64,000 nt of DNA from Octopus sinensis (Eukaryota): the NCBI RefSeq assembly GCF_006345805.1, contig NC_043023.1:17112001-17176000 (forward strand), in the 5' to 3' direction. Positions 13,663 through 62,442 of the stretch are shown piece after piece. The number at the start of each line of letters is the position of its first letter. The stretch's first letter is position 1. The notes beneath the pieces are model-generated. The model searched no databases. It was not told where the DNA came from and was given only the letters and a program-made list of their open reading frames with translations. Both the position numbers and the translations under genes were made by a program.

Positions 13663-13899
13663 CAGTGGTTGTTGAAATATCTTGTTCCCTGAAAACAATA
13701 CCTCCGCTTTAGCAAAGGTGGAAGTAATAAAAGAAATCCTGTTTATTGGAACTAGAAAAAAGAAACACCAAAAAGCAGAAGATACTGATTCCAGTGGGAC
13801 ACGTCCGGTTGGTCGATTTTGCAACTAAAAGTGAAGTTTACTTAACAACCCTGTGACAGTCATGAATCTGAAAGGTAAGTGAATTAATAATATTAAGAA

Positions 13900-20692: not shown

Positions 20693-20710
20693 ATTGTATA
20701 TTTTTCAGGA

Positions 20711-21041
20711 ATGGAAACAACAATTCAGTACCATTCGATTCCTCTTCTGCTGCCAGCTTTGACACTTTTGCTTTTCGTGACTCTTGTAACTGCCGGAGAA
20801 CCAACGAATAGAGATGGTCTCTTCAGAAAAACCACAACATCAAAATGCTTAATTGATGAGAATAAAACAACTGACGACGCGTCATCTCTTACAGAATGTT
20901 CATTTCGGTGTATTTCCCGCGATGAGTGCCAATATTTTAGCTATTGTAATGGCCCGTGTTATATGCATCGATCGCTTTACAACGAAGAAATTAAAGATCA
21001 GGATTGCGCATGTTTATCGTATATTTTACTCTCCGGAAACA
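20711..21041 (+). CDS. Coding exon 1 of a secreted PAN/apple-domain protein (signal peptide plus PAN-like domain)
   Basis: Acceptor ttttcag at 20708; ATG at 20711; hydrophobic LLLPALTLLLFVTLVTAG; SSLTECSFRCISRDECQYFSYCNGPC; donor A/GTATGT at 21042 (phase 1). Confidence 0.85.
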
Positions 21042-21123
21042 GTATGTAAATCACAATTTTCTGGCATATTTTTCCTAATTTCTGTAGTATATTTTCATCA
21101 TTATCCCAATTGTTTTATAAACG

Positions 21124-21188
<65 letters not shown>

Positions 21189-21237
21189 CACACACACGCA
21201 CACACATTTATGTATGTATGTATTCTGCCATTCTATT

Positions 21238-21430
21238 ATTTGTTTCAGTCATTTGTGGCCATGCTGGAGCACCGCCTTTAGTCGAGCAAATCGATCCAAC
21301 GACTTATTCTTTGTAAGCCTAGTACTTATTCTATCGGGCTCTTTTGCGGAACTCCTAAGTAACGGGTGACATAAACACACCAGCATCGGTTGTCAAGTGA
21401 TGTTAGGGGGACAAACACAAACACACAAAC
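21238..21430 (-). mobile_element. 3' part of the dominant SINE
   Basis: Reverse complement of 14985-15190. Confidence 0.8.
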
Positions 21431-21489
21431 ATACACACACACACTTATATATAGATATACATATATATTATTTTAGGAAAGATCTTTGC

Positions 21490-22100
21490 TCCAATACCCT
21501 TGAACGGTCTCCATGTCATCGCAGAAAGAATCCTTCCAGAATCCCAGTGTGTTTTCCGAGCATTACTTGGAACCATAGACACGATCTGCGCCAGACAATT
21601 CCAAAACAAGTATCGAGAACAACAAAACCGTATTTTCCTTATCTTTTATGATCTGCAAAATGTTTTTGATAGAGTACCAAGACCAGCCATATGGACGGCC
21701 CTTGATTATTTCTTCTCCCTGATCATACAATGGTATGACTGGGCGTTTCCTTCATCGTGATGGACTCTCAGAAGAATTACCAATTACATCTGGAATGAAA
21801 CATGTTTTCGTTCCCGCAACTATGCTTTTCTCCCTATAATTGCTGCAACGATCTATGAACTTCCCTTGGATCAGCTGGGAAAGGACATCAGATATCGTTT
21901 TGATGAAAGGCTCTTTAGCCTGGTGAGGTTTCGGTCAAAGAATCTTACCAGTTCCAAGCGAATCTCAGAACGTCACTTTGTCGATGTCAACATGGTCACT
22001 CGGTCACTCAAGCTTAGAACCGCAAAAAGCTGTCAGTTATTTCACCATTGCGTATCAACGTTTTGAGCTCACTGTAAATTCTAAGAAATCTCAGTTCTTC
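21490..22100 (+). mobile_element. Degenerate RTE-clade RT fragment (intronic)
   Basis: ILPESQCVFR...TIDTICARQFQ.KYREQ...LIFYDL..VFDRVPR.AIW. Confidence 0.8.
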
Positions 22101-22329
22101 GCCTAATCAATCCCGAATTCTGCCCTTCTGGACTTTAACATCATAATTTCGGGCACACCACTGGAACGAGTTAATCACTTTGCATGCCTTAGAAGTGTGC
22201 TTTCCACCAAACACAATCTTGAGCGAGATGTGGAACGAGGAATTGGACCGGTTCACACAGCTTTCTTTGAAATAAATAAATGTCTTTCCTGAAAAATCCT
22301 GGAAACTTCTGGAATGCACACCTGTTTCT

Positions 22330-22770
22330 TTAAAATCCTATTGGTGTCAGAAAAAGTTTACACAGATATGACCGTCATCGGTTGAGGCTGGAGCGTTTGC
22401 TAAATTAAATGCGCCTAAGCGTAAGCGGCCCTTATCAATGGGAGAAATCCAGTCGTAAATAGATGATTTAAACAGCGATGAAGAAGTGTTTTTCTGATTT
22501 TCTGTCATCATCAATTGAAGCAGATGATGTTGAAAATGATGTTTCAGATAATACAGAAAAAAATAATGCTGCAACTAGCTCTGGATGGAAAAAGTGCACC
22601 GATTCTTCTCCATTTGTACGGTTGTTTAAGACCAACAATTATTTTAGTTTTTGTGCTTAATTTAATGAAAATAAATATAAAAATTAGCTTTATGAAAAAG
22701 AGGTTTTTTTCGATTATTGCCTGTTTGTAACAACATTCATGCAACACTTTTCCGCCGTTTAAGGGTTAAC
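22330..22770 (+). mobile_element. Possible piggyBac-like remnant
   Basis: Acidic SDEEVF...EADDVENDVSD stretch; ends aaggg-TTAA; no matching left end found. Confidence 0.3.
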
Positions 22771-22809
22771 ATCTTGTTTGTATACTTACATTTTTTATTG
22801 CTGATACAG

Positions 22810-22901
22810 GTACAAGCTGGCAGAAAGTATTTGAGATGACCCCAAACTCATTTAAGAAAAGCCCTATTTATTTGTACTGGGACAATTTGCCTATTGAAAA
22901 G
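22810..22901 (+). CDS. Coding exon 2 of the PAN-domain gene
   Basis: tttattgctgatacag acceptor, phase 1 in, open frame (S)TSWQKVFEMTPNSFKKSPIYLYWDNLPIEK, AAG/GTAATG donor (phase 0). Confidence 0.85.
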
Positions 22902-24643
22902 GTAATGAATTTTTAGAATTTCAAGATGATTCTCATTGAATAACCAATCTACATATTTGTTGCTGTTTTACAATAATTACTAGTGTTTTCTTTTAAATGT
23001 TTAATTTCAGCTTCTGATGTTTGTTTCCTTTTTAAAATCTATCTTTTCTGGTTAGCAAGTTTCTTTGGCGGGGTTTCACGATAGAACTAGATCCAGACTA
23101 ATTTTCCTTCTAAATTTCAATGGAATATTGTGCAGCGTTTTCATTTGGCGGCAAGAGTGTTGCTATAAAATATACACGACGCATAGAAACCTATTCCTCT
23201 CGTATTTATTTCTCCTTTTTTTTTCTGTTTCACTAGCGAGACTTGGGGACTAATGTCCGGCCTTTTATTTAGATTTTCATCATTTTCGCCGGGTATCGGT
23301 TTGTATGTTTCTGTTTTTCGTGACATTTACATTTATATGTGCCTAGCAAACACCTTTCCGCAGCAGCTGAACTCCTCATCTACCATTCCTTTACCTCTTC
23401 CTTTCTCATTGTCCATTTCCGGTCCATATCCATTTCGTTTTCTCCGTTTCTATTTGATCCTTTATTCTCCCCCCGTGGTCCGGGATCATGTGGGCATGAT
23501 TTCCCCATGCTTTTTCGATGCAATTTTTCACCAGATCGGGCTGCAAACCCTTTTGATCCTTCGTTACGCTGTCGCACTCTCAAGCATCTCTCCGCTTTGT
23601 CATCCCTCTTTCTGGATTGTCAGCAAGTCCTTCCCTACAGTCAGTATCTGAGGAACTTCAACCGTGTTTCGTGGTCTGCTACCACAACAGCTCCTTTATA
23701 GGATTCAGTTAGCTCAAGACATCATCAGAAGGAACCACGTCCGGTTTCAGCCCCTACTCCTCTTTCGAAGGTGTTTTCAGCTTTGGTGTTGGGTGCATGT
23801 CTTCTTTCTTCTTTCTTCTGCTCCCTGGACTCTTCGATGTATCGTCAACGAGTGTCAACGGGCGACTGTCTTGCATTTTGAAAGGAAGAGGTGAAATGAT
23901 GAAGTTTAGGTCGAGATTTGTGAATATGTAGATGGTGTGGCAAAAATAAGAATGCTTTTCCCTCGAGACGAACTTCAGAACAGGGTATATAGTTACACTC
24001 CACCAAGGCCAAAAGATCATGATGGACATACCTACACGCGTACCTACCCACAACACCTGGCCAGAAACTACTATCCTTCTGACATCCGCTCCTCACGTCC
24101 ATGAAAAATGCTGTTCAAATGTCCCGCTTCTCGACGTGACGTCACTTCCCCTTCCGGTCCTGATGTCTCCCTTCATTCCTCCACAGAATATCAATGTGAC
24201 ATTGTTGATGGGAGATTGATTCTTGTTGTTTTTATCCTTTGTTTTTGTCCTGGATTTTGTCAGGGTCTTCTACTTCCCACAGATGCAACGAAACTTTTTA
24301 TAAAGACTCCGAAATCCCGACTCATTAGTTATTAATCCGATTCTCTGTCTCATAAATCCAAACTCTTTCTCGCCATCTTAATCTTGCACTTCAGTCGCTA
24401 CTTTGTATTTTATCCTCTCACTTTCACTCCCTCTCTCTCTCCTTTCTCTCCGTCTCCTCCTTTTTCACTTCTCTAATCTTTTTCTCTTTTACTCTGAAAC
24501 TCTCTCACACTCTTCCTTCACTTTTCTTTATATCTCCTTCTCACCCTCCTACTCTCTTCCTATATAACAACCCAGTCCCCTTTCTCTTACCCCCCTTACT
24601 CTTTTAGATTCTTTACTGATCCGAGTCAACTTTCTGTTTTCAG

Positions 24644-24786
24644 GTGAAATTTCAGTTGAGCGGAATAGTCTCTTTCACGTATATTTTCAACGGCAGAGGG
24701 ATGACTTCTACATCGTGGTTCCAAAAAGATAATCTCATTTCAGGTCCAAATGTCGCTCAGTTATATTCCTATACGTTCAATAACAA
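24644..24786 (+). CDS. Coding exon 3 of the PAN-domain gene
   Basis: tttctgttttcag acceptor; VKFQLSGIVSFTYIFNGRGMTSTSWFQKDNLISGPNVAQLYSYTFNN; AA/GTATGT donor (phase 2); paralog at 63134-63284. Confidence 0.85.
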
Positions 24787-24877
24787 GTATGTATAAATTA
24801 TCTTCTTACTCATTATTAACATCTTTAATGATTTAATGATAATAAAAATAATGATTTCTCTCATAGGTACAGAATCA

Positions 24878-25925
24878 CGTATTTTAAATAATAATAATAA
24901 TAATAATGAAATTATTGTATACAGTGCTCAGGTGCACCACAACTTGTCAGAAAGTGCATATAAAGTACATGCAGTAATGTAGAAATGTCTGGAAAGCGAA
25001 CAATGTATGAGTCAGATACATGCTTGTGTGTGTATGGAGGAGAGAAAATCAGGTGTAGTGTTGGTGAATCTCAGGAAGCATGGAGGTTTTGAAGGATGCA
25101 GTGCTCCGACAACTAACAACTGATGCCGACAGTTTGTTCCATGCTTCAGTAACTCTCAGCGTGAAAAAATGTTTCTGAAGTCATGGGAGCTGTGCTGTTT
25201 CTTACTTTGTAAATATGTCCACGGGTGTTAGATGGGTGGAGTTTGAAAAGGTGCTCAGAGTTATTGTTTGTACGATGGTTGATAATTTTATGGGTGTCTG
25301 CCAAGTCAGCTGCCAGACGTCGGAGTTCAATGTGTCCATGCTCAGAGAAGTAAGGCGTTCAGGATATGGCAAATGCCTGATGGAGGGTATTCTTTTGGTT
25401 GCACGTCGCTGAACAGCTTCCAGACGATTGAATCCTGGGCAAGATAAGGGTTCCAGACCGGTGATGCAAATTCCAGGTGAGGTCTTACCATAGCTATATA
25501 AAGCCGCAGAAGATAGCCGGAGAGCGGCTCACAAAGGATTTGGTGAGTGATGCCAAGACACCCTCAGCCTTTGGACAATTTAGCGATGTGTTTTGTCCAA
25601 CGCCAATCACTGTCGACAATAACACCAGGTCACGTTCACATGAAGACTTTTTGAGACTAGTGTTGTGGAGGGAGTAGGTGGACGCTGGGTTTCTCCTCCA
25701 AAATGCATGGTGGTACATTGTCTACAGCCAGCGTGAGTTGCCAGTCCATGATCCACTGCTGCATTGTGTCCAGGTCTGCTTGCAATAGAGATCTATAGTG
25801 TACAGGATTTGACCTCTTTATTTCGAGTACAGCTTGATGTCATCTGCATATTTCAGCACTGTGGAATTCTTTAATTTGGCATCTATGTCATTAACATATG
25901 CAACAAATAAAAGGGGGCCAAGAAC
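24878..25925 (-). mobile_element. CR1/L2-type LINE 3' fragment in intron 3, left arm only
   Basis: Minus-strand frames give MVRPHLEFAS.VW.PYL..D..RLEAVQRRATK...ERL..L; (TTA)n tail; empty site at ~63030. Confidence 0.85.
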
Positions 25926-26154
25926 AGAGGTGAAGTCGATTTTATTACTTACTTTATTGCTATTATTTTACCGACCCTAAAATAATGGAAGGCTTTGGTA
26001 GAATTTCCGATCAAAATCTTAAGGGACGAAACTATCGCAAGGTATATTGCTTGGCACTTCACCGGTTCTCACACTCACCCATTTCATTGTTGTAGTACTA
26101 GTAGCAGAGGTGGTAGTGGTCGCGGCGATGATAGTAGTAGTAGTAGTAGTAGTT

Positions 26155-26186
<32 letters not shown>

Positions 26187-26254
26187 CCTGTCTGCTATAG
26201 GCACAAGATCTGCAATTTGGGGTAAGGGGGGATTGTTTATTGCTTAATTGGTAC

Positions 26255-26399
26255 TTAATTGGTAATTAATTATTTCATCGACCCCCGAAAGGATAAAATT
26301 AATCTCGGCGGAATTTGAACTCAGAACGTAAAGACGAATAAATTGTTGCTAAGCATTTTGTCCGGAACGCTAACAATTCTGCCAGCTCGCCGCCTTCTA

Positions 26400-26400
<1 letters not shown>
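26255..26400 (-). mobile_element. SINE (ggcgagctggcagaa... family)
   Basis: tcgacccc...gaatttgaactcagaacgtaaagac; further copies at ~27170-27350, 40140-40470, 58030-58210 and 62480-62620. Confidence 0.75.
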
Positions 26401-26467
<67 letters not shown>

Positions 26468-26474
26468 GATGATA

Positions 26475-26530
<56 letters not shown>

Positions 26531-27088
26531 AAATGCCCTGATGCAGTACCAGGCAGTGGCTCTCATGGCTTCTGATCTTAATTGATTGGAAGTGTTATCA
26601 CGTACATTGTTTTGTCTTGGTATAAAAGATGGTCTACAGCAAATATTCTCCTCAATACCACAGATTTGCTTGTCAGTTGTTTGATCCTAACCAGTTGAGC
26701 ATGACCCTTGGTGGCTGACGATATGGGCATCTCTGATCACGAGCAGAAGTAGTTGGGGAGCACCATAGCCATGTGTTGAGAGGAATTCTTTGGCGTTTGG
26801 ATAATTCACCTCTGGAAACATGGGGGTTTCGTTCAACATCCTAAAACAACCCTTATTCAGGGACCTATTGACAGGATGGGTTACTCGACCTGAAGAAAAT
26901 TCTAACTGGGCCCCACCTTCAAGGTCATGCGCTGTTTATCTTGATATGAGATTACCATGTCGCGCGCATATGGTTGTGATGCATGTGCCTGGTGTACCCT
27001 TTTCAGTCGGGTAGTCATGATGGGTTATACTGGATATCGTATAATTTACCCCGGGGTCACTTTGATGGCATGCACTGCTCTCTCACTC

Positions 27089-27090
<2 letters not shown>
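26531..27090. mobile_element. ~560-bp non-coding insertion within a (TAA)n/(TGA)n microsatellite
   Basis: Flanked by trinucleotide repeats; absent from the paralogous site, which holds the R4/Dong element instead. Confidence 0.65.
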
Positions 27091-27131
<41 letters not shown>

Positions 27132-28361
27132 TAATAATAATAATATAATAATAATAATAATAATAACAATATAATAATCCTATCTACTGGAGGCATAAGG
27201 CCTCAAACTTGAGGCGAAGCAGCTAGTCAATTACATCAACTGGTACTTATTTCATCGACCCCGAAACGATGAAAGGCAAAGTCGACCTCGACGGAATTTG
27301 AACTCAGAACGTCAAGGCGGATGAAATGCCGCTAATCATTTCGCCCGGCGAGAAAAACTAATTACTGGTACTTTTTAAGTAAGAAATCAGTCACAACTCA
27401 GAGGACGGAAATATACATATAAAAACAATACCAATACAAGGTGAAAAGATAAAAACATATTTTTAACATACGTACTTTTCCCGTCATAAACTTGATTGTA
27501 TAAAACTGCTTTTTTAATTAGAAAATGAGGTTGGAAACTGTATCTTTAAGCTGGCCACTTTCTGCGCTGGATTTACACTCGAAATTAAACTAAAAATCCC
27601 TTCCCCGTCAATCCACTTTAATTAATGGCACATATAATTATCGGTCCATCAACTTGCTGTCCCTCCATTGTATCTCTTCTACCATTATTAAAATGAATTT
27701 CTGCCCCATCAAACTGTATAACTGCTGCCCAAAGCCGCTGGGTACATTTACCAGCCCTTTTTTCTGACAGCCAATTTGAGTCTCATTCGTATCAGACACA
27801 TTTCCTAAAACTTCCATTTTAGAACCACAGTATTCTGACGCCCCATCTCTAATCCCCATTTCCCAAAATACACCCGTTGACACAAGCAGGGGTTGCATAG
27901 CAACTGTTTCGTCTTTTAGAGCTAAAAACACGGCATCGAGTAAAAAAAAAATACGTGATTCTGATGGTAGAACAAGCGGGAGCTGATGGAATATCATGTT
28001 TTCTATAAGAATCTGCATTTGTTTCCACTCAACACTGTACTATCGCTAGTCGATATAGTTCGACATCCATTCTATCTACGAAAGAAATAGGACCGGATTG
28101 TCATGGTTGGAATGACTTTTAACCACAGATCTCCTTGATCAAAGCCGAACTGAAGCTAAATCAATAAGTCCTGGATTACCCAAATTACGTTGTTTTTACT
28201 TTCTACTTCATGAATAAATTGGTTTTGAAAGACTAAAATCAGATATGAAATGATAAACTCGTTGATTTCATTAAACTGAACTGATTGCTATAAACACAGT
28301 CGTAAAACCTTTCTGTGTAATAATTTGCATTAATCTATGAATTGTAATATATTAGTTTCAG

Positions 28362-28465
28362 TTACCCAGAATTTAACATCACGTATTCTACCGACAATCG
28401 GATACAAGCCAAAAGACTAAGTGGAATTGACGAAAAGTACGATATTTATTTCAAAACAAATATTG
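28362..28465 (+). CDS. Coding exon 4 of the PAN-domain gene
   Basis: attagtttcag acceptor, phase 2 in, open (N)YPEFNITYSTDNRIQAKRLSGIDEKYDIYFKTNI, G/GTAAGT donor. Confidence 0.7.
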
Positions 28466-28804
28466 GTAAGTAAAACATATCCTCTTGATTTGAGTGCAAA
28501 TGATTGTATAATTGTGTGTGTGTGTGGTTTTTTTTGAAACGTTATCATATATACATAGATATTTTAAATATTTTTTAAAGCGAAACTGTAATTTATTAGA
28601 ATGATAATATTGGTCGATGGTTGGTACTATTACTTGATATTTCAATATTTTAGACTTAAGACCCTTCTTCGTGAAAGTTACAAAAGAATGGTGTTGATAG
28701 CTGTTTTCTCTGCCCTCTAGTGTGTGAGTATGGAAGTTATTTGTTTTTAGTTACTATAGTGTACAATCAGCTGCGTGCAGTTCAGATCTGTTATTAATTT
28801 ACAG

Positions 28805-28827
28805 GTTGTACTTGCCAATTAAAATAG
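28805..28827 (+). CDS. Putative terminal coding exon 5 (G)CTCQLK-stop
   Basis: ttattaatttacag acceptor, phase 1; total CDS is 693 nt = 230 aa plus stop; very short, so support is limited. Confidence 0.45.
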
Positions 28828-34905: not shown

Positions 34906-35225
34906 TTACGTGCGTATACACACACAAATATATATATACAGTATATATAGATATAATAACACTATACTTGTTCCACGTCCTCGCAATGTGTTTTCTCTTT
35001 GTTCATGTTTGGAGTAACTATACAATATATATATATATATATATTTATATGTATATATATATATACATACACACATACACACACACATATATATCATGAT
35101 CATCGAGAAATTTAGAATTAACCTCATTATTTTCCAAATAATTTTTTCCTTCATTGTTTTTTTTCTTTTCAGGTATAAAACCTTTCGAAACCCTGGTCAT
35201 CTCAGTATCTCTCTATTCTTAGATA
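34905..35225. repeat. Short pLTR-like dispersed repeat
   Basis: tacttgttccacgtcctcgc...gaaaccctggtcatctcagtatctctc; inverted copy at 46805-47140. Confidence 0.75.
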
Positions 35226-45835: not shown

Positions 45836-45994
45836 TTATTCTTCTTTCTAACTGCTGTAAGCTTTTCCTTTCCTTCTGATGAAGGACTCACCTCTGAAAT
45901 CTTGAGTTTTTCTCTTCTATTGAACGCAGTCCTGTCTATGATGTCCTTTATTATTATTCAAAGCATTTACATTATACATCAATTTCTGTCTGTC

Positions 45995-46800
<806 letters not shown>

Positions 46801-46934
46801 ATTAATAGAGAGATACTGAGATGACCAGGGTTTCGAAAGGTATTATACCTGAAAAGAAAAAAAACAATGAAGAAAAAAATTATTTAGAAAATAATGAGGT
46901 TAATTCTAAATTTCTCGATGATCATGATATATAT

Positions 46935-46989
<55 letters not shown>

Positions 46990-47139
46990 AGGTATATGTG
47001 TATATATATATAATATATATTATATATATATATATTGTACAGTTACTCCAAACATGAACAAAGAGAAAACACAACAATGCGAGGACGTGGAACAAGTATA
47101 GTGTTATTATATCTATATATACTGTAAATATATATACTG

Positions 47140-47194
<55 letters not shown>

Positions 47195-47549
47195 TATATA
47201 TATATAAAATTGAGGGAGATAAATTAATATTAATTTTAATTTTAATATCAATTTAAAACCAGTAGTCCAGCATTCAAAAAATCTGAGGAGTCAGAGAAAA
47301 TTCAAATATATGTGTATATTGGCAGGGCTGGCCTGCTAGGTAGCCGGCCAGAATGCTAAATTCTTCCTCTAGAGAGAATTTACCTAATATATATATATAT
47401 ATATCTATATATATATATATATATCTATATATATTATATTATTATATATATATATTTATATTGACCTATTGAATGTATGTCACAATTATGAACTATTACA
47501 TCATACTCTTTAAACATATAGAATGGACTCTATTATATATAAAAAAAGA

Positions 47550-47596
47550 AATTTTTGATAAGGTTCGTTATTTCAAGAACCGAAATATGTTAAATT
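47550..47596 (+). ncRNA. Hammerhead motif in the 5' pLTR (U3-A8 covariant)
   Basis: AATTT-TTGATAA-GGTTC..GAACC-GAAA-TATGT-T/AAATT. Confidence 0.6.
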
Positions 47597-48223
47597 AAAA
47601 TTTGTCTAATATAGCGGCATTTTCAAACTTCATTTTTTACAAATATATACCCACTCGTATACGAGCTAATCATATTATAAATATCATATCACGTTCGAGC
47701 TCCCGAAAATGCCTACTAAAATAACACCAACGACATCTCCTCAATAAATGAAGCGATACTGAAAGAATTGAAAAGCATAAATTCAAATCTAACAGCAGTG
47801 TTAAACAAACTCAACTCAACATCTCGACCTTCTACACAAACTAACGAGGAAACCGAATCGAATAAAACACCCTCTGAAATATACGAGAAAGTTGAAAATC
47901 TATGCGATACAATGAAGACATTCTTCACAAACTTTACGAAACAAGAGCAACAAAAAGAAGGACCACATAAGAAGAACCGAATAACTTCAACATTACAAAT
48001 AAAGAACCAAGTCCTCCCCCAATGGAGAATACTACAGCGAAACAGAAAATTCGCTTTTTGGAAAATGATACAAATCAGAATAAAGCAGAGATTTACCAAA
48101 AGTGGCTTGACTCAACACCCTAATCATACCCCAGCATTTACAAATAACCCCATCTTGGAAGAACCAGAAGAACAAAGAAGACTTAGAGAAAAAATGTCAT
48201 TAGAAAAAATGAAGATGGAAATA

Positions 48224-49520
48224 CGAGGGGCGTTCAATAAGTAATGCCCCTGACCCAATTCCCATAGCAGTAGAGCAACGAAACTTGGCACAGTTATTAG
48301 TCTTTTTCTACATAGGAACCACTCAGAGTTACACATTTCTCCCATCGTTTTGATGGCAACATCTGGAGAGACCGTTTTTTGTAGAAGACCCCAGCTTGGT
48401 CCTCCAACCACGACGTGACTTCAGAAATCAAGCTGCATCATCTGGGAAACGCTTTCCTTTCAAAAAACAACTTCATGGCTGGCAAGAGGTGAAAATCAGA
48501 GGGTGCAAGGTCAGAAGAGTAGGGGGATAGGGGAGGAGTTAATAGCTGCACGCCTGTGCTTCTGATCTGGCAACACGCGAGTTGTAGACCGGAGCGTTGT
48601 CCTGCAGGAGGAGGATGCCTCTGCTGATCTTGCCCCGCCTCTTGATTTTGATAGCTTCTCTTAATTTCCTCAAAAGTGAAGCATAATAGGCTCTTGTAAT
48701 TGTGGTACCCTTTGCCAGGAAATCTGTCATCACTACTCCGTCCTGGCCCCAGAAGACTGTGAGCATGACCTTGCCAGCGGAGGGCTGCACCCTTGCTTTC
48801 TTTGGAGGAGGTGAGTCACGGTGCTTCCACTGCATTGACTGGGCTTTGGTGTCGGATCATAGTGATGGACCCAGGTTTCGTCCTGTGTAATCAGTCTTTT
48901 GAAAAATTTTGACTCATCTTCTTGGCACATCTCCAAATTCATCCTCGAGCACTCGACACGTTCTTGCTTCTGGAAAGGTGTGAGCAACATGGGAATCCAT
49001 CTGGCAGACACCTTTTGCATATGCAAATGGTCATGAATGATACTTTCCACAGACCCGGTACTAAACTTGACCTCATGGGCTATTTGGCGAATAGTTATGC
49101 GTCGATCTTCCAAAATGACAGCCTCAACTTGATGGACAGATGCCTCATCAATGGCAGAAGGGGTGCGACCAGATCTGGGAGCTGTTTCCGCAGAGTTCCA
49201 ACCATGTTTGAATTCACGATGCCAGCGTTTTACAAGGTCATATGATGGGGCATCATCACCATAAGTTACTTTCATTTCATCAAAAGTCTCCTGTGGTGTG
49301 CGTCCTTTCAAATACAAAAACCGGATAACTGCTCGACACTCAACAGGCTCCATTTCAGACTTGACTCATTTCAAACACCTGTATTTCAGTAACCACAATT
49401 AGTTCAGAGCTGTAATTTGCCACTTAATCTATAGAGATATAAATAATTGCACATGTAAATTTTCAGCTAGATCAAACAACTGCAAGTGGGTCAGAGGCAT
49501 TACTTATTGAACGCCCCTCG
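48224..49520 (-). mobile_element. Mariner (D,D34D) transposon, 1297 bp, transposase disrupted
   Basis: TIRs cgaggggcgttcaataagtaatgcc.ctgaccca; TA target duplications at 48222-3 and 49521-2; TQDETWVHHY, LLQDNAPVY, SSDLAPSDF; frameshift and stops. Confidence 0.95.
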
Positions 49521-49792
49521 TAGAACTACTTAAGCTGAGAGCTAAGACGAATGAAGAAAAAGTAAAAACCATAGATGAGGAAATCAACGAAGAAGTCATC
49601 AAACTAATAGACGACATCAATACTGAAACATTACTAGCACTATAGAATGAAGAATGTGAAAAAGAGGAACTTAAGTCCCTCCAACGATGGGAAAAGAGCG
49701 CCATCTGGTTCTTGGATTATGAAACCAACTTCAAAAATGAACACATATCCAACAACCCCTTCATAAAATTAAGTAAAACAAAACAAAATACC

Positions 49793-50060
49793 AACAGAAC
49801 GGAACAACCACCAAGAAATCCTAACACACTCTACACCAGAAAAATACACTAAAACACCACCCCACACTACCTACACCAACCCCAAAACACCTACAGAGGT
49901 CCACCACACCATTCGAGAATAGATATACCAACAGAACAGAACAACCACCAAGAATCCAAAACACTCTACACAGAAAAATACATTTAAACGCACCCCACAC
50001 TACCTACACCAACCCCAAAAACACTTACAGGGGCCCACCACACCATTTCACGAACCAAGG
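49793..50060 (+). repeat. 2 x ~135-bp tandem inside the Penelope N-terminal region
   Basis: aacagaac.gaacaaccaccaagaa...ccaccacaccatt occurs twice. Confidence 0.75.
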
Positions 50061-52883
50061 GCTACACATACAATTCTATGAAATACAATCCACATAACCA
50101 AACTAAAACTCTACCACCAAACATCCACCTAGGAACCACATACATACAAACCTAACAAACAACAAATGCACTACGGAAGAAACAACCCACAACACAATAT
50201 ACCTGATGAACTAAGACAGAAACACTAGGTACAACAGCACACCTCAGAACAGAGCACCACAAACTCACTCTAACAATTATAACAGCATGAGACAGATAAA
50301 CAGTAGTTTTGAACATAACTACACCAACCATTTTTTAGACCTTACACACAGGAAAGGGACACACGATGGCAAAGGACAAACAAAAGAAACCTCAGGTAAT
50401 TAAGATAATCAATCTCTCAAACAAAGAACTTACACCTAACGAAAAGTACTCTCCAAAGGATAAATTTACACCAACCCCACAACGTTCTAATTACTATGAA
50501 ATGAAAGATGATATTCGGAATTTTGCAGGAAACTAAGACTTACCGAGGAATTTCATGGCAAACAAATAAATGAGGATTCAATAGCTAGAAACAAGAGCAA
50601 TTACACCCCCACCAAGGGAAAGAATAAAGCCTTAGACCGCTATTGTGACTACATAACTAATTTCCGTTCAATTCACCAAGAAACAAAAACACAGCCTAAC
50701 TTTAACAAAAGAGAATGGAACGACCTCATCAAACTAAGAGGAGAACAAAGCAATAACAATAAGGAGGCAGACAAGGGCAACGCGATAGTAGTAATGATAC
50801 AAACGATTATAAAAATTTAGTACTATCCCTATTAAGAGATGAAACGTATTATGAAAGGGCCCAACAGTATAATCAGCAAAAAATAATGTATAACCTTAGG
50901 ACATTAATCAACACATACCGAGAAGGACTCACGGACAAGGAGTATGAATACATCACTAACTTCAAATGCAATCGAGTTTGTTTCTATGGTATCCCTAAAG
51001 TACACAAAAGCCAAATAATTAGAGAAACATGCAAAACATCTACCGATATACTCATCAAAATCCCTTCACCAAATGATCTTAAACTTAGACCGATAATAGC
51101 AGGGCAAGCATGTGAGACTCACCGCCTCAGCAATTTCTTAGACACACTTCTTAAACTTTCCTAAAACACATCAAAAGCTACGTAAGAGACTATATAGACA
51201 TGCTCAACCACCTCCCTAAAACAGTCAATGAGAAAACCCTTCTAGTATCATTCGACGTAGTTAACCTTTATTCAACATCCCTCACAACCTAGGAATAGAA
51301 GCGATCACCTTCTGGCTGAATAACTACTCCTTTGAACTCCCAACTCGCATAAACAAAGACTTATAATAGAAGGACTTAGATTTATTTTAGAAAACAATTA
51401 CTTTATTTTGACAATAATTTCTACAGACAAAGATCGGGAACAGCGATGGGCACGCGTACTGCACCTTCTTTTGCCAACCTAGTGATGGGATACCTCGAGA
51501 AAATACTCTACCAGATAACACTCGAGAAATATGGAAAACCTTCTCCACCTATATCCAGAACAACTGGAAAAGAAACCTCGACGACTGTTTATATCTGGGA
51601 TAAAAGTATAGAGAAACTTGAGGAATTTAAAATACTATTAAATGGAATAAATGATAATATTACAATTCACGATGGATCATAACGAAGAAGAATGACCATT
51701 TTTAGACATCCTCATTAAGAAAACCGGCAACAAAATAGAGACAGATATCTACTATAAACCGACAGACTCCAAACAGTACCTACCCTTTGATTCATGCCAC
51801 CCACGACACACTAGAATAAATGTCCCTTTTTGTTTAGCTAGAAGGATTTGCACCATAATATCAGACACAAACACCCGACACACACGTCTCCAGGAACTTA
51901 GAACCACACTCACAAATAGAAACTATCCACAGCCCCTAATAGACAGTGCAATCCAAAGGGCACTTAAATTAAGTATAGAAGACCTGAGACAAACAAAACC
52001 AAAAAAGAAAGAACAATTAAAAACCCTTCCCTGCATCTCTACACACAACCCACTCAACAATGAGGCCTTCAGCACCATACTACAAAGCACAGCCCTGCTA
52101 AAGGGAGACCCAAAGATGAACCGGATCCTCGAAACACACCATCATTAAAAGTAAACGGCAACCAAAATCCTTGAAAAGGATTTTAACCCAAGCTAAACTG
52201 CACTCGACATCAACCACAAAACCAGCAGTTAGAAAATGTGGAAGGCCCAACTGCGGAATCTGTGTCATCTTGGTAGAAGGTTCAGAATTTATACTAGAAC
52301 AAGGCCATCAGTTCACCATTAGAGCAAACTTCACCTGTGCATCAGAAAACTTAATTTACGTCTTAACATGCGCAGGCTGCAATAGGCAGTATATAGGCCA
52401 TACAAAAAATAGCTTACGTAACAGGATGGCGGTGCATAAATCACAAATTAGAAACCCTGAATACCGGAAAATACCGGTCAGCGGACACATAGATAGATGT
52501 GCTGCAAATGTAAATCCGAAATTTACAACTTACCCACTTTATAAATTCAGTGACAGCGTAACCTTCACGCAACGCCAAAATAAAGAACTTTATTTCATCA
52601 AAAACTTTAGACCAAGTTTGAACACCCTGGGCCAGGAATATTAAAACAAAACATTGGTCCTCCGAAAAAGAAAAACGAAATTCTACCACAACCACCACGA
52701 CTGCCCCAACTCGCACTACTACTACAACCACCGTGGTAACTGTTGCTACGGCCACAGTGAGAGAATTATAATAATGGAGGTGGGGTGAATTACAATTTCT
52801 CAGATCCTTAAACAGTCACTCACGCTGACAGTGATATGTCTTAGGGAAGGAAAAATTTATAAAAAGATTTCTTTCTCTGCGAG

Positions 52884-53186
52884 CAGATCTAATTCTGATT
52901 CGTCAAAAAATTGATGACGTGTTACCTCAGTGGTCAAGCTATTGTCACTCTGCTTGGTCGGTTTCCTCACACGATACAGCTATGGGTCAGACCCGATTCT
53001 GATTCGTCAAAACATTGATGACGTTTTTCTTCCGTGGTCAAACTACTCGTTCTGCTGGGCTAGCCACCTAACAGGATACAGTCATGGGTCAGATCTAATT
53101 TCGATTCGTCAAAAAATTGATGACGTGTTTTTTCCGTGGCCAAACTTGTCGTTTCGCTTGGTTGGTTTCCTAACAGGATACAGTTA
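52884..53186 (+). repeat. 3 x ~103-bp tandem in the Penelope 3' region
   Basis: Units start at 52884, 52988 and 53090; conserved gattcgtcaaaa(a/c)attgatgacgt. Confidence 0.85.
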
Positions 53187-53509
53187 GGAGTCTTTTCACT
53201 ATATTCGTTGAGGCTGGTTTTGATTGGTTTGGAACTATATGACGTCAGTGAACAGTGCAAGTGACCACAGCTTAGCTGATATAAATCCAACAATCACAAA
53301 ATTTACCAAAATTATGCCAGCAGACACCAACAAAAATCATTACTGTTGCTCCCATTGGAACACAAGGTAAAATCTATAATGAACTCCTCGTCTTTTCAAG
53401 AACATGAATTTTTTATATTTGACTCTATTGAATGTATGTCACAATTATGAACTATTACATCATACTCTTTAAACATATAGCATGGACTCTCTTTATTATA
53501 TATATAAAA

Positions 53510-53556
53510 ATTTTTTGATAAGGTTCGTTATTTCAAGAACCGAAACATGTTAAATT
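53510..53556 (+). ncRNA. Hammerhead motif in the 3' pLTR (U3-A8 covariant)
   Basis: TTGATAA-GGTTC..GAACC-GAAA-CATGT-T; palindromic ACATGT stem III. Confidence 0.65.
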
Positions 53557-53803
53557 AAAATTTGTCTAATATAGCGGCATTTTCAAACTTCATTTTTTAC
53601 AAATATATATATATAAACAAATAAACAGATCAACATACAGACGGATAGGTTCATAGGTTATAAGAACAGACAAGCACACAAAGGCAAATGGAGACTGAAT
53701 GACATGAAACACACACTTTACTTCACACAAGGACACATATGGAGACACGGGTCCACACATATAAAGAGGCATATCCATACATACAAACATGGTACATAGT
53801 TGC

Positions 53804-53836
<33 letters not shown>

Positions 53837-54674
53837 GGAGACAGGTGCATAAATATACAAACACACGCTCACACACACTCATACATAAAAAATACACAAA
53901 TACGGACATGCAAGCACACGGATATGCAGAATTCATACGTACAGATGCAGACACATACATACGTATATGCATACACACACATATATACATACATACATGC
54001 ATGCAAACATACATACTTGCATGCATGCATAGGCACAGACACACACACACACACACACACACAAGGAGACAGGTGCATAAATATACAAACACACGCTCAC
54101 ACACACTCATACATAAAAAATACACAAATACGGACATGCAAGCACACGGATATGCAGAATTCATACGTACAGATGCAGACACATACATACGTATATGCAT
54201 ACACACACATATATACATACATACATGCATGCAAACATACATACTTGCATGCAAGCATAGGCACAGACACACACACACACACTGATCCACACACATGCGC
54301 ACAAACAAACAAAAAGGAACACAGTGTAAATAACGGACAGAGTCAAGACCATTGAAAAGGTTGCAAGACGCAACGAAAATTTTTGGAAAATAAAAATAAG
54401 AAATAAGTGGAAATTTGACCGGTGAGCTTGTTAAATTATAAGACACAAAAATAAAATGACTCTCCCCATAATTTCTATAATTCTATTTACCCTAATATTA
54501 TTTATTATGTTTATATATATATATATATATATTTATAGTTATACAAAGAAGTAAATATATGGCACAACGAAGTACCGATATTTACTGGAAATAGCGAACG
54601 TGTGCAACAAACTAGAAAAAATTGTCTTACCTCCAGGGAGAACATCTGAAAGATGAAATACCTGGAAAAGGATA

Positions 54675-54753
54675 ATGTGGGACCTGCGCAGGTTTCAGAT
54701 TTTTCAAGATATGTCTGCACCCATAAACTTGATCTATCTTCATCAGCCAAACA
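54675..54753 (-). ncRNA. Mirror-image hammerhead ribozyme
   Basis: Reverse complement of 55130-55208. Confidence 0.8.
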
Positions 54754-55129
54754 TATACCACGACAACATTTCAGATGTTACCACATTAATGCCATTACAC
54801 TCGACTGAAACGCCGAAACGCTAACAGCACGAGAACGGTGAAGAAGTTTCAATAAATTAGTAATGCAATACTAGAGTATTGCTTTCCAGTAAAGAATAGC
54901 CCGTGAGGGAAAAATATACAAAGAAGTAAATATATGGCACAACGAAGTACCGATATTTACTGGAAAATATTTTTCCTCACGGGCTATTCTTTACTGGAAA
55001 GCAATACTCTAGTATTGCATTACTAATTTATTGAAACTTCTTCACCGTTCTCGTGCTGTTAGCGTTTCGGCGTTTCAGTCGAGTGTAATGGCATTAATGT
55101 GGTAACATCTGAAATGTTGTCGTGGTATA

Positions 55130-55208
55130 TGTTTGGCTGATGAAGATAGATCAAGTTTATGGGTGCAGACATATCTTGAAAAATCTGAAACCTGCGCAGG
55201 TCCCACAT
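55130..55208 (+). ncRNA. Type I hammerhead ribozyme
   Basis: TGG-CTGATGA-AGAT...ATCT-GAAA-CCTGCGCAGG-TC/CCA; palindromic ACCTGCGCAGGT stem III; GUC cut after 55202. Confidence 0.8.
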
Positions 55209-55497
55209 TATCCTTTTCCAGGTATTTCATCTTTCAGATGTTCTCCCTGGAGGTAAGACAATTTTTTCTAGTTTGTTGCACTCACTCATTTTTGCTAGTA
55301 CATACGCGGTGAAGCTATACATTAGCGTCGTATTATTACGTTCGCTATTTCCAGTAAACATCGGTACTTCGTTGTGCCATATATTTACTTCTTTGTATAT
55401 TTTTCCCTCACGGGCTATTCTTTACTGGAAAGCAATACTCTAGTATTGCATTACTAATTTATTTATATTTATATATTATAATAATATTACATATATA

Positions 55498-55557
<60 letters not shown>

Positions 55558-55576
55558 TATATATATATATATATAT

Positions 55577-55618
<42 letters not shown>

Positions 55619-55907
55619 GTGTGTGTGTGTGTGCGTGTGTGTGAGTGTGAGTGGTGTGTGTGTGTGCATGTGTGTATGTTTGTGTGTTTGTCCCCCAATA
55701 TCGCTTGACAACAGATGCTGGCGTGTTTATGTCCCCGTAACTTAGCGGTTCAGTAAAGGAGACCGATAGAATAACTGCTAGGCTTACAAAGAATAACTCC
55801 TGGTGTCGATTTGCTCGACTAAAAGCAGCGCTCCAGCATAGCCACAGTCAAATAACTGAAACAAGCAAAAGAGTAAAAGAGTATATATATACACACACAT
55901 AATACAT

Positions 55908-55972
<65 letters not shown>

Positions 55973-56104
55973 TACACACACACACACACATACATACATC
56001 ACTACAACTCGCACCACAAATACAGAGGCGTCTCCACCAGAACTACCACGACTGCTACCACCAATACTAACAATACTCCTTTTTCAGGAAACGGAGAGAG
56101 AGAG

Positions 56105-56642
56105 AGACAGGTTATTTGCACCTAGAATACCAACAGATGTCCCCTTTCGTTTCAAACGATTGCAATTCCCAGTGAGAGTCAGTTACGCATTGACCCTTAA
56201 CAAGTGCCAAGCTCAAACTCTGCAGCTTGTCGGTCTCCATTGAGAAGAGGGTTGTTTCTCACATAATCAATTATATGTAGGTGGTTCCAGAGTAGAAAAC
56301 CCACAGAAATTCTTTATTATGCTTCAAACAACTAAGTTAAAAGCATTGTGTATACAGAGTGGTTGCATACTGTCAAAATAACGTGACAGTCCCGTAAGGG
56401 AATTACACCACTGCTGTTTAGTCCTTGGAAGCATCGACGCTTCCTGTCGGCTTTGACATATTTCCTGTGTCCTTATATTTGCGAAGGGGAGGCAAGCACC
56501 CCCAACAGCTAGGATTCGCTCCTCCACCGCTCATGTCTCTTTGAGACCTTTAGAAATCCAATATTTCTAATTACGGTGACCAGTGAATAGATTGCACTGT
56601 AAATATAGATATTTGCGACGGTTAGACAGGCATCTCAGCTAG
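56105..56642 (+). mobile_element. Helitron 3' fragment
   Basis: PRIPTDVPFRFKRLQFPVRVSYALTLNKCQAQTLQLVGLH*..CFSHNQLYVGGSRV (Pif1-like helicase motifs); CTAG at 56639-56642. Confidence 0.8.
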
Positions 56643-56915
56643 CAGGGCTCACTATCCCGGACTGATGATATATATATATTTGTGTGTGTATATACATATT
56701 GATAGCTGATCTCTTTGCTCTCTAGTGTGTGTGTGTGTGTGTGGAGAGAGAGAGTTGTTTTGCGTTGTTATAGTATCCAATCAGCTGCATGCAGTTCAGA
56801 TGCATTGGCTGTGGTATTTCCGTGTGTGATTCTTAACAGAAGAAGCCACACTCAAGAATTCAAGTTTCCATTGAAGCTACAGTAAGAAACTTTGGGAACT
56901 TATGAGAAATAGAAT

Positions 56916-56938
56916 CTATTTTAATTGGCAAGTACAAC
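56916..56938 (-). pseudogene. Paralog of putative exon 5 with a mutated acceptor (AG to AT)
   Basis: Minus strand reads ttaatttacat-gttgtacttgccaattaaaatag. Confidence 0.4.
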
Positions 56939-58234
56939 ATGTAAATTAATAACAGATCTGAACTGCACGCAGCTGATTGTACACTATAGTAACTAAAAAC
57001 AAATAACTTCCATACGCACTCACTAGAGGGCAGAGAAAACAGCTATCAACACCATTCTTTTGTAACTTTTACGAAGATGGGTCTTAACTCTAAAATATTG
57101 AAATATCAGGTACTAGTACCAACCGTCGACCAATATTATCATTCTAATAAATTACACTGTTTCGCTTTAAAAATATTTAAAATATTTATGTTTATATGAT
57201 AACGTTTCAAAAAAAAAAATTTAGCTTCAGTTCGGCTTTGATCAAGGAGATCTGTCGTTAAAAGTCATTCCAACCATGACAATCCGGTCCTATTTCTTCC
57301 TTAGATAGAATGGATGTCGAACTATATCGACCAGCGATAGTACAGTGTTGAATGGAAACAAACGCAGTTTCTTATAGAAAACATGATATTCCATCAACTC
57401 CCGCTTGTTCTACCATCAGAATCACGTATTTCTTTACCCAAACAATGCCGTGTTTTTAGCTCGAAAAGAGGAAACAGTTGCTATGCAACCCCAGCTTGTG
57501 TCTACAGGTGTATTTTGGGAAATGGGGATTAGAGATGGGGCGTCAGAATACTGTGGTTCTAAAATGGAAGTTTTAGGAAACATGTCTGATACGAATGAGA
57601 CTCAAATTGGCCGTCAGAAAAAGGGCTGGTAAATGTACCCAGCGGCTTTGGGCAGCAGTTATACAGTTTGATGGGGCAGAAATTCATTTTAATAATGGTA
57701 GAAGAGATACAATGGAGGGACAGCAAGTTGATGGACCGATAATTATATGTGCCATTAATTAAAGTAGATTGACGGGGAAAGGATTTTTAGCTTAATTTCG
57801 AGTGTAAATCCAGCGCAGAAAGTGGCCAGCTTAAAGATACAGTTTCCAACCTCATTTTCTAATTAAAAAAGCAGTTTTATACAATCAAGTTTATGATGGG
57901 AAAAGTACGTATGTTAAAAATATGTCTTTATCTTTTCACCTTGTATTGGTATTGTTTTTATATGTATATTTCCGGCCTCTGAGCTGTGATTGATTTCTTA
58001 CTTAAAAAATACCAGTAATTAGTTTTTCTCGCCGGGCGAGATGCTTAGCAACATTTCATCTGCCTTGACGTTCTGAGTTCAAATTCCGTCGAGGTCGACT
58101 TTGTCTTTCATCTTTTCGGGGTCAATGAAATAAGTACCAGTTGAATGTTGGGGTCGATGTAATCGACTAGCCGTTTCCCCTCAAATTTGAGGCCTTAAGC
58201 CTCCAGTAGATATTATTATTATTATTATTATTAT

Positions 58235-58320
<86 letters not shown>

Positions 58321-58346
58321 ACTACTACTACTACTACTACTACTAC

Positions 58347-58396
<50 letters not shown>

Positions 58397-58397
<1 letters not shown>

Positions 58398-61300: not shown

Positions 61301-62442
61301 TTAATTTGTTGTTGCAAACGCTCTTGCCAAGAAGGCTTTTTGTGGGACTGTTGCCGTTTTCTAATCTTTACACCACATAGGATCGTTGAGATTTTCGCGG
61401 ATGCATAGTATAGGTGGTTGAGATCTGTGATATCAACATCATTAGCTGAAATTATATCCTTAAGTGCAAGCAGGGTTTTACCAATTATTTTCATGTTTTG
61501 GTTAGAGTTGCGGATTTTAGGGAGTGTATCACGTTTATCCATACTGGTTTCTTTAATTTTCAGCCATTCAATCATGATTTGACTTTTTAGCTCATGTAGT
61601 TCTGTCGGTCAATATTTGTGTGACTTTCTTCATCTATTTGATGTTCATCTGTCTTAGTGTTTATATTTGGTTCAGGGAGTATTTCACTTTGCCTATCACT
61701 TATACTAACTCTTTCAATCCTTACTTCGTTTTTATTAGCTCTGAGCTGGTCTATAATTATTTCCTCTGTATTATCTTCTTTAGCTGCAGCTTCGTTCATT
61801 CTATCCGTTACTGCTTGTCTAATTTGATCAACCTCTACTTCAGTCAGTAATTTTTTTTTATGTTTCTTCTGACGTTGGCAAGTTTGTTACTGTCTATGTA
61901 GGGTCTTACTTCAGGGTGTTTCTGTCTCTAGTTTATGTAGGTTTGTATAGTGTTCGATTTATCTGTGGGGAAATATATGGCATGGTAGAAGGCCGCAAGA
62001 ACTTCTTTATTATCTTCCCTAGTCCATTTTTCCTTCTTTTTCTTTTGAGTGTTTGGTGACGAGCATGGATGGCCATCTGTTGGAATATTCCAGTTGCGGG
62101 GTACGTCCAGCTCCTGTGTGTCGGGAAGATTTGATCCAGTAGCTGATTTTTCAATCAGACTTTGGTTCAATTTTCGGGTACGTGGTATTTTGTAGTCCGC
62201 TCGCCGACCATCGCGGATTGTAGGTTGTTTTGTTGACATTGAAGCATAACGAGCTTCCATTCTTATATTAGGAGATGGATCTGTCAGTTTAGGATTCTCT
62301 GCACGTAAACATTGTTCGTAGCGCAGGTTTTTAAGGCTAGCAGATCTGTATTCATCTGTATTTTTTTTGTTGATAGTTTTATCTCCGGGCATAGTTTTCC
62401 CTTTTTTTTTTACTTATGAAAGGTTCACTCTGCCTGTATTAG
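58397..62442 (-). mobile_element. R4/Dong-clade non-LTR retrotransposon (RT, CCHC, restriction-like endonuclease) inserted in (TAA)n; frameshifted
   Basis: GIFQGDSLSPLLF, HLIYMDDLKL, CRVC...ETIDHVVSKC, RPDIIL...LIDMTVP...KYKDL; (TAA)n on both flanks, the known Dong target. Confidence 0.88.

What the first reader, a model, noticed from the sequence alone, without database searches (positions are those of the whole stretch)
20711..28827. Hidden 5-exon gene for a ~230-aa secreted PAN/apple plus 'FNG.G..S.SWF' protein
The ORF track shows only the first exon, fused to (TA)n. Four further segments have canonical GT-AG sites and matching phases (1,0,2,1), giving a stop-free 693-nt CDS. The product has a signal peptide, a PAN-like CxxxC...CxxF.Y...C domain, then WQKVF...YW..LPI.KV...FNGRG..STSWF...LIS. 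From recall, similar motifs occur in uncharacterised invertebrate secreted proteins. I recognise no gene name.
Basis: partly seen in the sequence, partly recalled or inferred. Interest (0 to 1): 0.7.

Follow-up and report, generated by a model that had tools for sequence, protein, structure and literature searches.

The report
Unannotated octopus secreted PAN-domain gene

Summary
The gene is real. The 23-nt fifth exon (28805-28827) has no support. The family's conserved last exon lies at 35173-35222. A 13-nt first coding exon (MNLK) lies at 13862-13874. The corrected model has six exons, 735 nt and 244 aa (246 aa with a tandem acceptor at 28356), and spans 21.4 kb. The product has an N-terminal signal-like segment, a divergent PAN/apple domain and a ~130-aa all-beta C-terminal domain. 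That domain is a shortened, cysteine-free derivative of a ~190-aa extracellular module found in molluscs, a bryozoan, an echinoderm, a hemichordate and amphioxus. The module has no Pfam model and no relative in the PDB. A high-confidence AlphaFold model (pLDDT 93.7) finds no Foldseek match. Among recent tandem copies the C-domain evolves fast (dN/dS 1.2-2.6), while the PAN half is constrained. A decayed inverted copy lies at 45.9-64 kb. The function is unknown; I infer a secreted binding or recognition protein. This is a new member of an annotated but unstudied family. Interest is moderate.

The parts
13862..13874 (+). Coding exon 1: ATGAATCTGAAAG|gtaagt (MNLK plus the first base of Gly5); intron phase 1
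   Evidence: Pattern search and sequence. It is 94% identical over 70 nt to exon 1 of the O. sinensis copies. P0001 and P0004 start at the homologous site.
20709..21041 (+). Coding exon 2 (333 nt): rest of the signal-like segment plus the PAN/apple-like domain with 8 Cys.
   Evidence: tblastn E 6e-52; acceptor tttttcag|GA and donor ACA|gtatgt; PAN evidence.
22810..22901 (+). Coding exon 3 (92 nt): TSWQKVFEMTPNSFKKSPIYLYWDNLPIEK, the start of the C-terminal beta domain
   Evidence: tblastn E about 1e-14, up to 96% identity.
24644..24786 (+). Coding exon 4 (143 nt): VKFQLSG...FNGRGMTSTSWFQKDNLIS..., the conserved core motif
   Evidence: tblastn. A profile built from canonical-domain proteins only aligns aa 121-181 at 44.4 bits.
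28362..28465 (+). Coding exon 5 (104 nt). A tandem acceptor at 28356 would add Phe-Ser (NNNFSYPEF), as in most annotated homologues.
   Evidence: tblastn; sequence tattag|tttcag|TTACCC; homologues carry NFSYP.
35173..35222 (+). Coding exon 6 (50 nt with TAG): (G)IKPFETLVISVSLYS*, the family's conserved terminal beta strand
   Evidence: Motif scan; sequence with a strong acceptor, ttttttcttttcag|GT; correct phase and end-to-end alignment; homologous exon in every O. sinensis copy; strand E130-137 of the pLDDT 93.7 model.
28805..28827 (+).
   Evidence: No homologue matches it. 367 alternative acceptors behave the same way.
63134..63284 (-). Exon-4-like segment of a decayed inverted paralogue, with a 1-nt deletion inside the SWFQK motif (frameshift)
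   Evidence: tblastn splits into two frames; nucleotide alignment.
46802..46848 (-). Last-exon-like segment of the same decayed paralogue: (G)IIPFETLVISVSLY*
45937..63999 (-). Inverted segmental duplicate of 23916-36500. The stretch that matches 28162-28527, which includes exon 5, is missing at the 57219/57216 junction.
   Evidence: Self-blastn; junction alignment.

Best explanation
Window 13862-35222 (+) carries an intact six-exon gene. It is a further paralogue, or an orthologue from another Octopus species, within a tandemly expanded family that these searches found only in Octopus. The 244-aa product (246 aa with the alternative acceptor) has three parts. First comes an N-terminal hydrophobic segment that most likely acts as a cleaved signal peptide. 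Next is a divergent PAN/apple domain with eight cysteines. Last is a ~130-aa all-beta domain. That domain is a shortened, cysteine-free derivative of a ~190-aa extracellular module that marine invertebrates combine with PAN, EGF, C-type lectin, sushi, TSP1, D8C and ZP domains. I infer that the protein is secreted and N-glycosylated and works as a soluble binding or recognition molecule. On this reading the conserved PAN half is the scaffold or common binding part, and the fast-evolving beta domain is the variable, ligand-facing part. Shown here: exon structure, family membership, domain homology, the predicted fold and the evolutionary rates. Inferred only: secretion, binding function and ligand. 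Expression of this copy is untested.
For: Exons and phases. The corrected protein aligns end to end with full-length homologues and keeps all 18 family-invariant residues. P0004 has the same six-exon plan on its own locus. So do six O. sinensis copies, all with open frames; the closest has identical exon lengths, 91.6% nt and 83% aa identity. The only strongly hydrophobic segment is aa 14-35. PAN: and weak apple-domain Foldseek hits. C-domain homology: 135 hits at E<=1e-3 among 1.84 billion representatives; a profile built without the short family scores the window protein at 44.4 bits; the global alignment is. Partner domains are all extracellular. AF2 model: pLDDT 93.7, pTM 0.86. dN/dS is 0.2-0.9 in the N-half and 1.2-2.6 in the C-domain among close copies.
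Against: No transcript evidence was available for this copy. dN/dS near or above 1 in the C-domain also fits relaxed constraint; the single-pair Fisher test is borderline (p = 0.048). No signal-peptide predictor was run, and the n-region is long and nearly uncharged. PAN_1 scores stay below Pfam's gathering cut-off (14-17 bits against 21.4). No ligand, tissue or phenotype is known for any family member.
Confidence: 0.7

Rival explanations
1. One reading: five exons, start at 20711, a terminal 23-nt exon at 28805-28827, and a 230-aa product ending GCTCQLK.
For: Canonical AG/GT sites and an open frame. P0003 ends in ...VQLK, which superficially resembles ...CQLK.
Against: No homologue aligns to 28805-28827. 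Any of 367 downstream acceptors gives a short stop-terminated exon, and this one has a poor pyrimidine tract. The conserved E-x-L-V-I-S-V terminal exon is present at 35173 in the right phase and in all other copies. That exon forms a core strand of the predicted domain. The homologues start with MNLKG from an upstream exon.
Confidence: 0.06
2. The locus is an unexpressed or recently dead copy. The frame is still open by chance, and the copy is drifting neutrally within a large tandem array that also contains obvious pseudogenes.
For: Overall dN/dS against the closest copy is 1.1, and 2.6 in the C-domain. A decayed inverted duplicate lies in the same window. The protein is not in any annotation searched. 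The introns are full of repeats and RT fragments.
Against: All six exons keep their frame, splice sites and every family-invariant residue. The PAN half shows purifying selection (dN/dS 0.31, p = 0.03). A C-domain ratio above 1, rather than near 1, also appears between other intact copies, which fits diversifying selection better than decay.
Confidence: 0.17
3. The hydrophobic N-terminus is an uncleaved signal anchor, so the protein is a type II membrane protein that displays PAN plus the beta domain on the cell surface.
For: The n-region is long (16 aa), the hydrophobic stretch runs about 18-20 residues (aa 14-35), and no SignalP run was possible.
Against: A helix-breaking Pro sits inside the h-region. 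A small-residue T-A-G / T-G-x motif follows it in all homologues. The n-region has almost no positive charge.
Confidence: 0.1

Closest known systems
Octopus 'uncharacterized protein' / 'Apple domain-containing protein' family (for example O. sinensis LOC118768097, LOC118761432/3, LOC118768100, LOC118761055; O. bimaculoides LOC106867736, LOC106879016; an O. vulgaris hypothetical protein)
   Same: Same six-exon plan and phases, MNLKG start, signal-like segment, eight-Cys PAN region, W-QKVF...YLYWD.LPI.KV...FNG.G..STSWF core and E.LVISV terminal exon. Identity is 40-83%.
   Different: The window's exact protein is not among them. Several database models are truncated or chimeric, running into repeats or reading through the exon-5 donor. 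None has a described function.
Canonical ~190-aa 'W.LVF...FDG.GS...WF...GC..D.GW...C.W...YS...AD..aIfi' extracellular module of marine invertebrates (for example Dreissena A0A9D4DL53 'Apple domain-containing protein', O. bimaculoides LOC106873068, Mytilus, Solemya, Ruditapes, Mizuhopecten, Mya, Watersipora, Acanthaster, Ptychodera, and Branchiostoma proteins labelled 'HMCN1')
   Same: The central core is homologous (44 bits against a profile built without the short family). The two forms are collinear over the whole domain. PAN is often the N-terminal partner.
   Different: The octopus short form lacks the ~45-aa insert after the first strand. It also lacks both Cys-containing loops, so all four conserved Cys are gone. 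It is about 55 aa shorter. It occurs once per protein (twice in P0013), not in mosaic ECM-like proteins.
PAN/apple domains (Pfam PF00024): plasma prekallikrein and factor XI apple domains, apicomplexan microneme proteins MIC4, EtMIC5 and SML-2
   Same: The C-x3-C...C-x-Y-F-S/T-Y core aligns. The predicted beta-alpha-beta-beta-beta topology matches.
   Different: Scores are below Pfam's gathering threshold. Eight Cys are present rather than four to six. There is no protease or other known partner domain.

Membership tests
Octopus short PAN + beta-domain family | Six coding exons with intron phases 1,1,0,2,1, including the 13-nt MNLK exon and the ~50-nt terminal exon | tested here: met
Octopus short PAN + beta-domain family | Family-invariant residues of the C-domain (Q120, F123, M125, F130, P134, Y136, Y138, W139, D140, L142, I144, V147, F161, G163, S170, W171, F172, F191) | tested here: met
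   Alignment A1.
Octopus short PAN + beta-domain family | Evidence that this copy is transcribed and spliced | not testable with these tools
   No RNA-seq access.
PAN/apple domain (PF00024) | Score at or above Pfam's gathering threshold (21.4 bits) | tested here: not met
   14.2 bits for the full protein and 17.1 bits for the domain alone. The related canonical protein P0041 reaches 22.7 bits.
PAN/apple domain (PF00024) | Profile-level similarity to solved apple/PAN domains, and the helix-on-sheet fold | tested here: met
   The family profile hits kallikrein, FXI, EtMIC5 and MIC4 at E 6e-4 to 4e-3; the top 11 hits are all PAN/apple. The predicted secondary structure is E-H-E-E-E. Confidence is moderate.
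Canonical ~190-aa invertebrate extracellular module (no Pfam entry) | Core motif h-F-R-S..vd.W..l.i..VK...l.F.G.G....sWF....l | tested here: met
   44.4 bits, aa 121-181 aligned to HMM positions 39-101, with a profile that excludes the short family.
Canonical ~190-aa invertebrate extracellular module (no Pfam entry) | Four conserved cysteines (C...C before the core; GC..D.GW and C.W after it) and a full length of about 190 aa | tested here: not met
   Alignment A6 shows these segments deleted in all short-family members, and the window protein has no Cys after residue 106.
Secreted protein (cleaved signal peptide) | N-terminal h-region followed by a small-residue cleavage motif, with no other membrane segment | tested here: inconclusive
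   There is a single hydrophobic peak at aa 14-35, followed by T-A-G|E. No dedicated predictor was available.

The most novel reading that the evidence does not exclude
The C-terminal domain may belong to an undescribed extracellular domain superfamily with a fold not yet seen in solved structures. The superfamily is spread across lophotrochozoans and invertebrate deuterostomes. Octopus would then have evolved a minimal, disulfide-free version that is tandemly amplified and under diversifying selection, that is, a lineage-specific repertoire of secreted recognition molecules.
Probability: 0.3. Interest if true: 0.6.

Novelty: new member of a known kind. Interest (0 to 1): 0.4.

Why it matters
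For genome annotation, the locus shows how short first and last exons, separated by repeat-filled introns of about 7 kb, cause this family to be missed, truncated or fused. Several NCBI models in the sister species are chimeric. For biology, the gene points to an extracellular module that is widespread in marine invertebrates yet has no Pfam model, no solved relative and no literature. It gives a confident predicted structure with no structural neighbour in the PDB. Octopus has amplified a stripped-down, fast-evolving form of it. If the proteins prove to be recognition molecules (immune, mucus, gamete or prey-related), this would be a lineage-specific binding repertoire open to experiment.

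Tried and rejected
2. The full-length AF2 model built from 8 sequences was poor (pLDDT 56.6). Its Foldseek hits were not significant, with only weak apple-domain and lipocalin-like hits.
3. The spliced window protein could not be submitted to structure prediction, the representative search or the contig look-up. P0004, 56% identical, served as proxy.
4. Pfam scans of 47 domain sequences found no recurring family. A sub-threshold DUF7922 fragment on one amphioxus protein did not recur, and the other single hits were scattered chance matches below cut-off.
5. A profile search of PDB sequences with the C-domain gave 0 hits. Foldseek against PDB and BFVD gave no match better than E 0.06.
6. Literature searches by gene ID, accession and 'octopus + apple domain' found nothing. 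PAN and biomineralisation papers were uninformative.
7. I considered a link to cephalopod salivary cephalotoxins. No evidence was obtained, and the one paper read states that SE-CTX homologues are restricted to decapodiforms. The idea was dropped.
8. The word-indexed searches with profiles A7 and A9 returned only 9 and 3 hits, so they added species names but little reach.
9. No protein in hand is identical to the window, so the source species stays 'Octopus sp., close to O. sinensis'.
Full report
**Observation.** The window is AT-rich, microsatellite-laden animal DNA. The mechanical ORF list shows only the first segment, fused to the upstream (TA)n tract, as ORF 20498-21049. The arithmetic is therefore correct.

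**Homology and the four confirmed exons.** The 230-aa product finds 12 proteins, all from Octopus sinensis or O. bimaculoides. They are named 'uncharacterized protein' or, in UniRef, 'Apple domain-containing protein'. E-values run from 6e-90 to 2e-22. Searched back against the window with tblastn, they confirm four of the five segments:
- 20711-21041, E 6e-52
- 22810-22901, E about 1e-14
- 24644-24786, E about 1e-6
- 28362-28465, E about 2e-5

Nothing matches 28805-28827.

**The true ends of the gene.** The homologues begin MNLKG-MET..., and full-length ones end ...E-A-L-V-I-S-V-x-x-x. On its own locus, P0004 has a 13-nt first coding exon (ATGAATCTTAAAG|gtaagt) and a 47-nt terminal exon in phase 1.
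- A pattern search finds the window's first exon at 13862-13874 (ATGAATCTGAAAG|gtaagt).
- A motif scan finds the terminal exon at 35173-35222, behind ttttttcttttcag. It is in phase 1 and encodes (G)IKPFETLVISVSLYS*.
Between 28470 and 36000 there are 367 AG acceptors. In that phase every one reaches a stop, after a median of 12 codons, and the 28805 site does not have a good pyrimidine tract.

**The corrected model.** The six exons are 13862-13874, 20709-21041, 22810-22901, 24644-24786, 28362-28465 and 35173-35222. Together they give 735 nt and 244 aa. The product aligns end to end with the full-length homologues and keeps all family-invariant residues. Two uncertainties remain.
- A tandem acceptor at 28356 (tattag|tttcag|) would add Phe-Ser and give NNNFSYPEF, the form seen in most annotated homologues.
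- Read-through of the exon-5 donor would end the protein at ...NIGK*. The equivalent read-through is how the O. sinensis model LOC118768097 ends. That form would lack a core strand of the domain.

**Support from other copies.** O. sinensis loci carry at least six copies built on the same six-exon plan, and all have open frames. The closest, on CM016885.1, has identical exon lengths (13/333/92/143/104/50). Its terminal exon also lies far downstream, about 9.5 kb, against 6.7 kb in the window. Identity to the window is 91.6% at nucleotide level and 83% at protein level. No protein in hand is identical to the window. The source is therefore an Octopus close to O. sinensis, or an unannotated paralogue. 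Several NCBI models in this cluster are chimeric or run into repeats or a reverse-transcriptase fragment (P0001, P0002, P0011, P0055).

**Domains.** Residues 14-35 form the only strongly hydrophobic segment. The motif T-A-G|E follows it, which makes a signal peptide likely, although no predictor was run.

Residues about 41-113 carry eight Cys.
- Pfam PAN_1 scores 14-17 bits, below the 21.4-bit cut-off.
- A profile of 15 family members hits PDB apple and PAN domains: kallikrein, factor XI, EtMIC5 and MIC4, at E 6e-4 to 4e-3. The top 11 hits are all PAN/apple.
- The predicted topology is strand-helix-strand-strand-strand.

I accept this region as a divergent PAN/apple domain.

**The C-terminal domain.** A profile of the ~130-aa C-terminal domain was searched through 1.84 billion representative proteins. 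It found 135 hits at E<=1e-3.
- The closest hits whose source was looked up are all from Octopus.
- The rest share W.LVF...hFRS..vd.W..l.i..VK...FDG.GS...WF...S.W.DL...yFsi.G...RrFfin.nygGC..D.GW...C.W...P.ilYS...AD..aIfi.
- They come from bivalves, a bryozoan, a sea star, a hemichordate, amphioxus and octopods.
- They often have PAN at the N-terminus, or sit in mosaics with EGF, C-type lectin, D8C, ZP/FN3 (Pfam scan) and, read from the sequences and source names, sushi, TSP1 and kringle.

A profile built only from these canonical proteins scores the window protein at 44.4 bits over aa 121-181. A joint alignment is collinear over the whole domain. It shows that the octopus short form has lost a ~45-aa insert and both Cys loops. 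No Pfam family recurs on 47 domain sequences. No PDB sequence matches the profile.

**Evolution.**

| Comparison | Region | dN/dS | Note |
|---|---|---|---|
| Window vs closest copy | signal + PAN half | 0.31 | Fisher p = 0.03 for a deficit |
| Window vs closest copy | C-domain | 2.6 | p = 0.048 |
| Other close pairs | C-domain | 1.2-1.7 | |
| All copies vs the distant copy on L001 | both halves | about 0.45-0.7 | |

Synonymous divergence between the window/L005/L004 copies and the L002 copies is much lower in the 5' exons (0.05-0.19) than in the C-domain exons (0.39-0.49). This suggests gene conversion or a mosaic origin of the copies.

**The second copy in the window.** The window also holds an inverted segmental duplicate of 23916-36500 at 63999-45937. 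Its exon-4 copy (63284-63134) has a 1-nt deletion in the SWFQK motif. The stretch holding exon 5 is deleted at the 57219/57216 junction. Its last exon (46848-46802) is intact. It is a pseudogene whose 5' exons would lie beyond the window.

**Interpretation.** Shown: a real, intact six-exon member of a tandemly amplified family known so far only from Octopus; a PAN-like domain plus a derived form of a widespread, uncharacterised extracellular module; and a fast-evolving C-domain. Inferred: the protein is secreted and glycosylated (sequons at N56, N115 and N199) and acts as a soluble binding or recognition molecule, with the beta domain as its variable face. The ligand, the tissue and expression of this copy are all unknown. 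No paper mentions the family.

**Verdict.** The finding is partly right and worth correcting in annotation. It is a new member of an annotated but unstudied family. Interest is moderate and rests mainly on the undescribed domain.

Noticed in passing
window 23916-36500 (+) and 63999-45937 (-): Inverted segmental duplication, 82-94% identical. The minus copy carries a decayed paralogue with a frameshift in exon 4 and exon 5 deleted. Its exons 1-3 would lie beyond the window end.
   Followed up: yes
window 28350-28362: Tandem acceptor tattag|tttcag| at exon 5. The upstream AG (exon start 28356) adds Phe-Ser and creates an N-F-S sequon, as in most annotated homologues. It could be an alternative-splicing site.
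   Followed up: partly
window 19702-20325 and 21500-21760 (introns 1 and 2): Fragments that look like retrotransposon or reverse-transcriptase ORFs. The NCBI model P0055 from another octopus locus reads into the homologous fragment (86% identity to 21524-21715).
   Followed up: partly
window 24261-24332 (+), 63657-63586 (-), 28660-28731 (+), 57083-57012 (-): Repeat-derived segments that match the C-terminal tails of the O. sinensis models P0002 and P0011. Those database models are probably mis-joined into repeats, and the window copy at 28660-28731 contains a stop.
   Followed up: partly
L002 and L005 (O. sinensis CM016885.1, about 16.98-17.29 Mb): At least four tandem copies of the family lie inside the span of another gene model, a 103-aa product with CENP-T_C and faint TAF hits, which runs across both loci. 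The array may sit in a giant intron. The intact copy closest to the window (L005 52329-81543) was not among the proteins returned by any search here.
   Followed up: partly
codon alignment of the window gene with copies from L001, L002, L004 and L005: The 5' exons (signal + PAN) are far more alike at synonymous sites (dS 0.05-0.19) than the C-domain exons (dS 0.39-0.49) between subgroups. This suggests gene conversion or exon-level mosaicism within the array.
   Followed up: partly
window 49974-50009 and 50342-50461 (+): Two weak collinear tblastn matches (E 0.3-0.9) to the YLYWD and FNG..SWF parts of the family. They may be a further decayed fragment or may be chance.
   Followed up: no
window 20560-20700, 21125-21200, 35225-35320, 26040-26560: Dense microsatellites, (TA)n, (CA)n, (GATA)n/(CAGA)n and long A/T-rich triplet runs, directly abut exons 2 and 6. 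They probably hinder both gene prediction and read mapping here.
   Followed up: no
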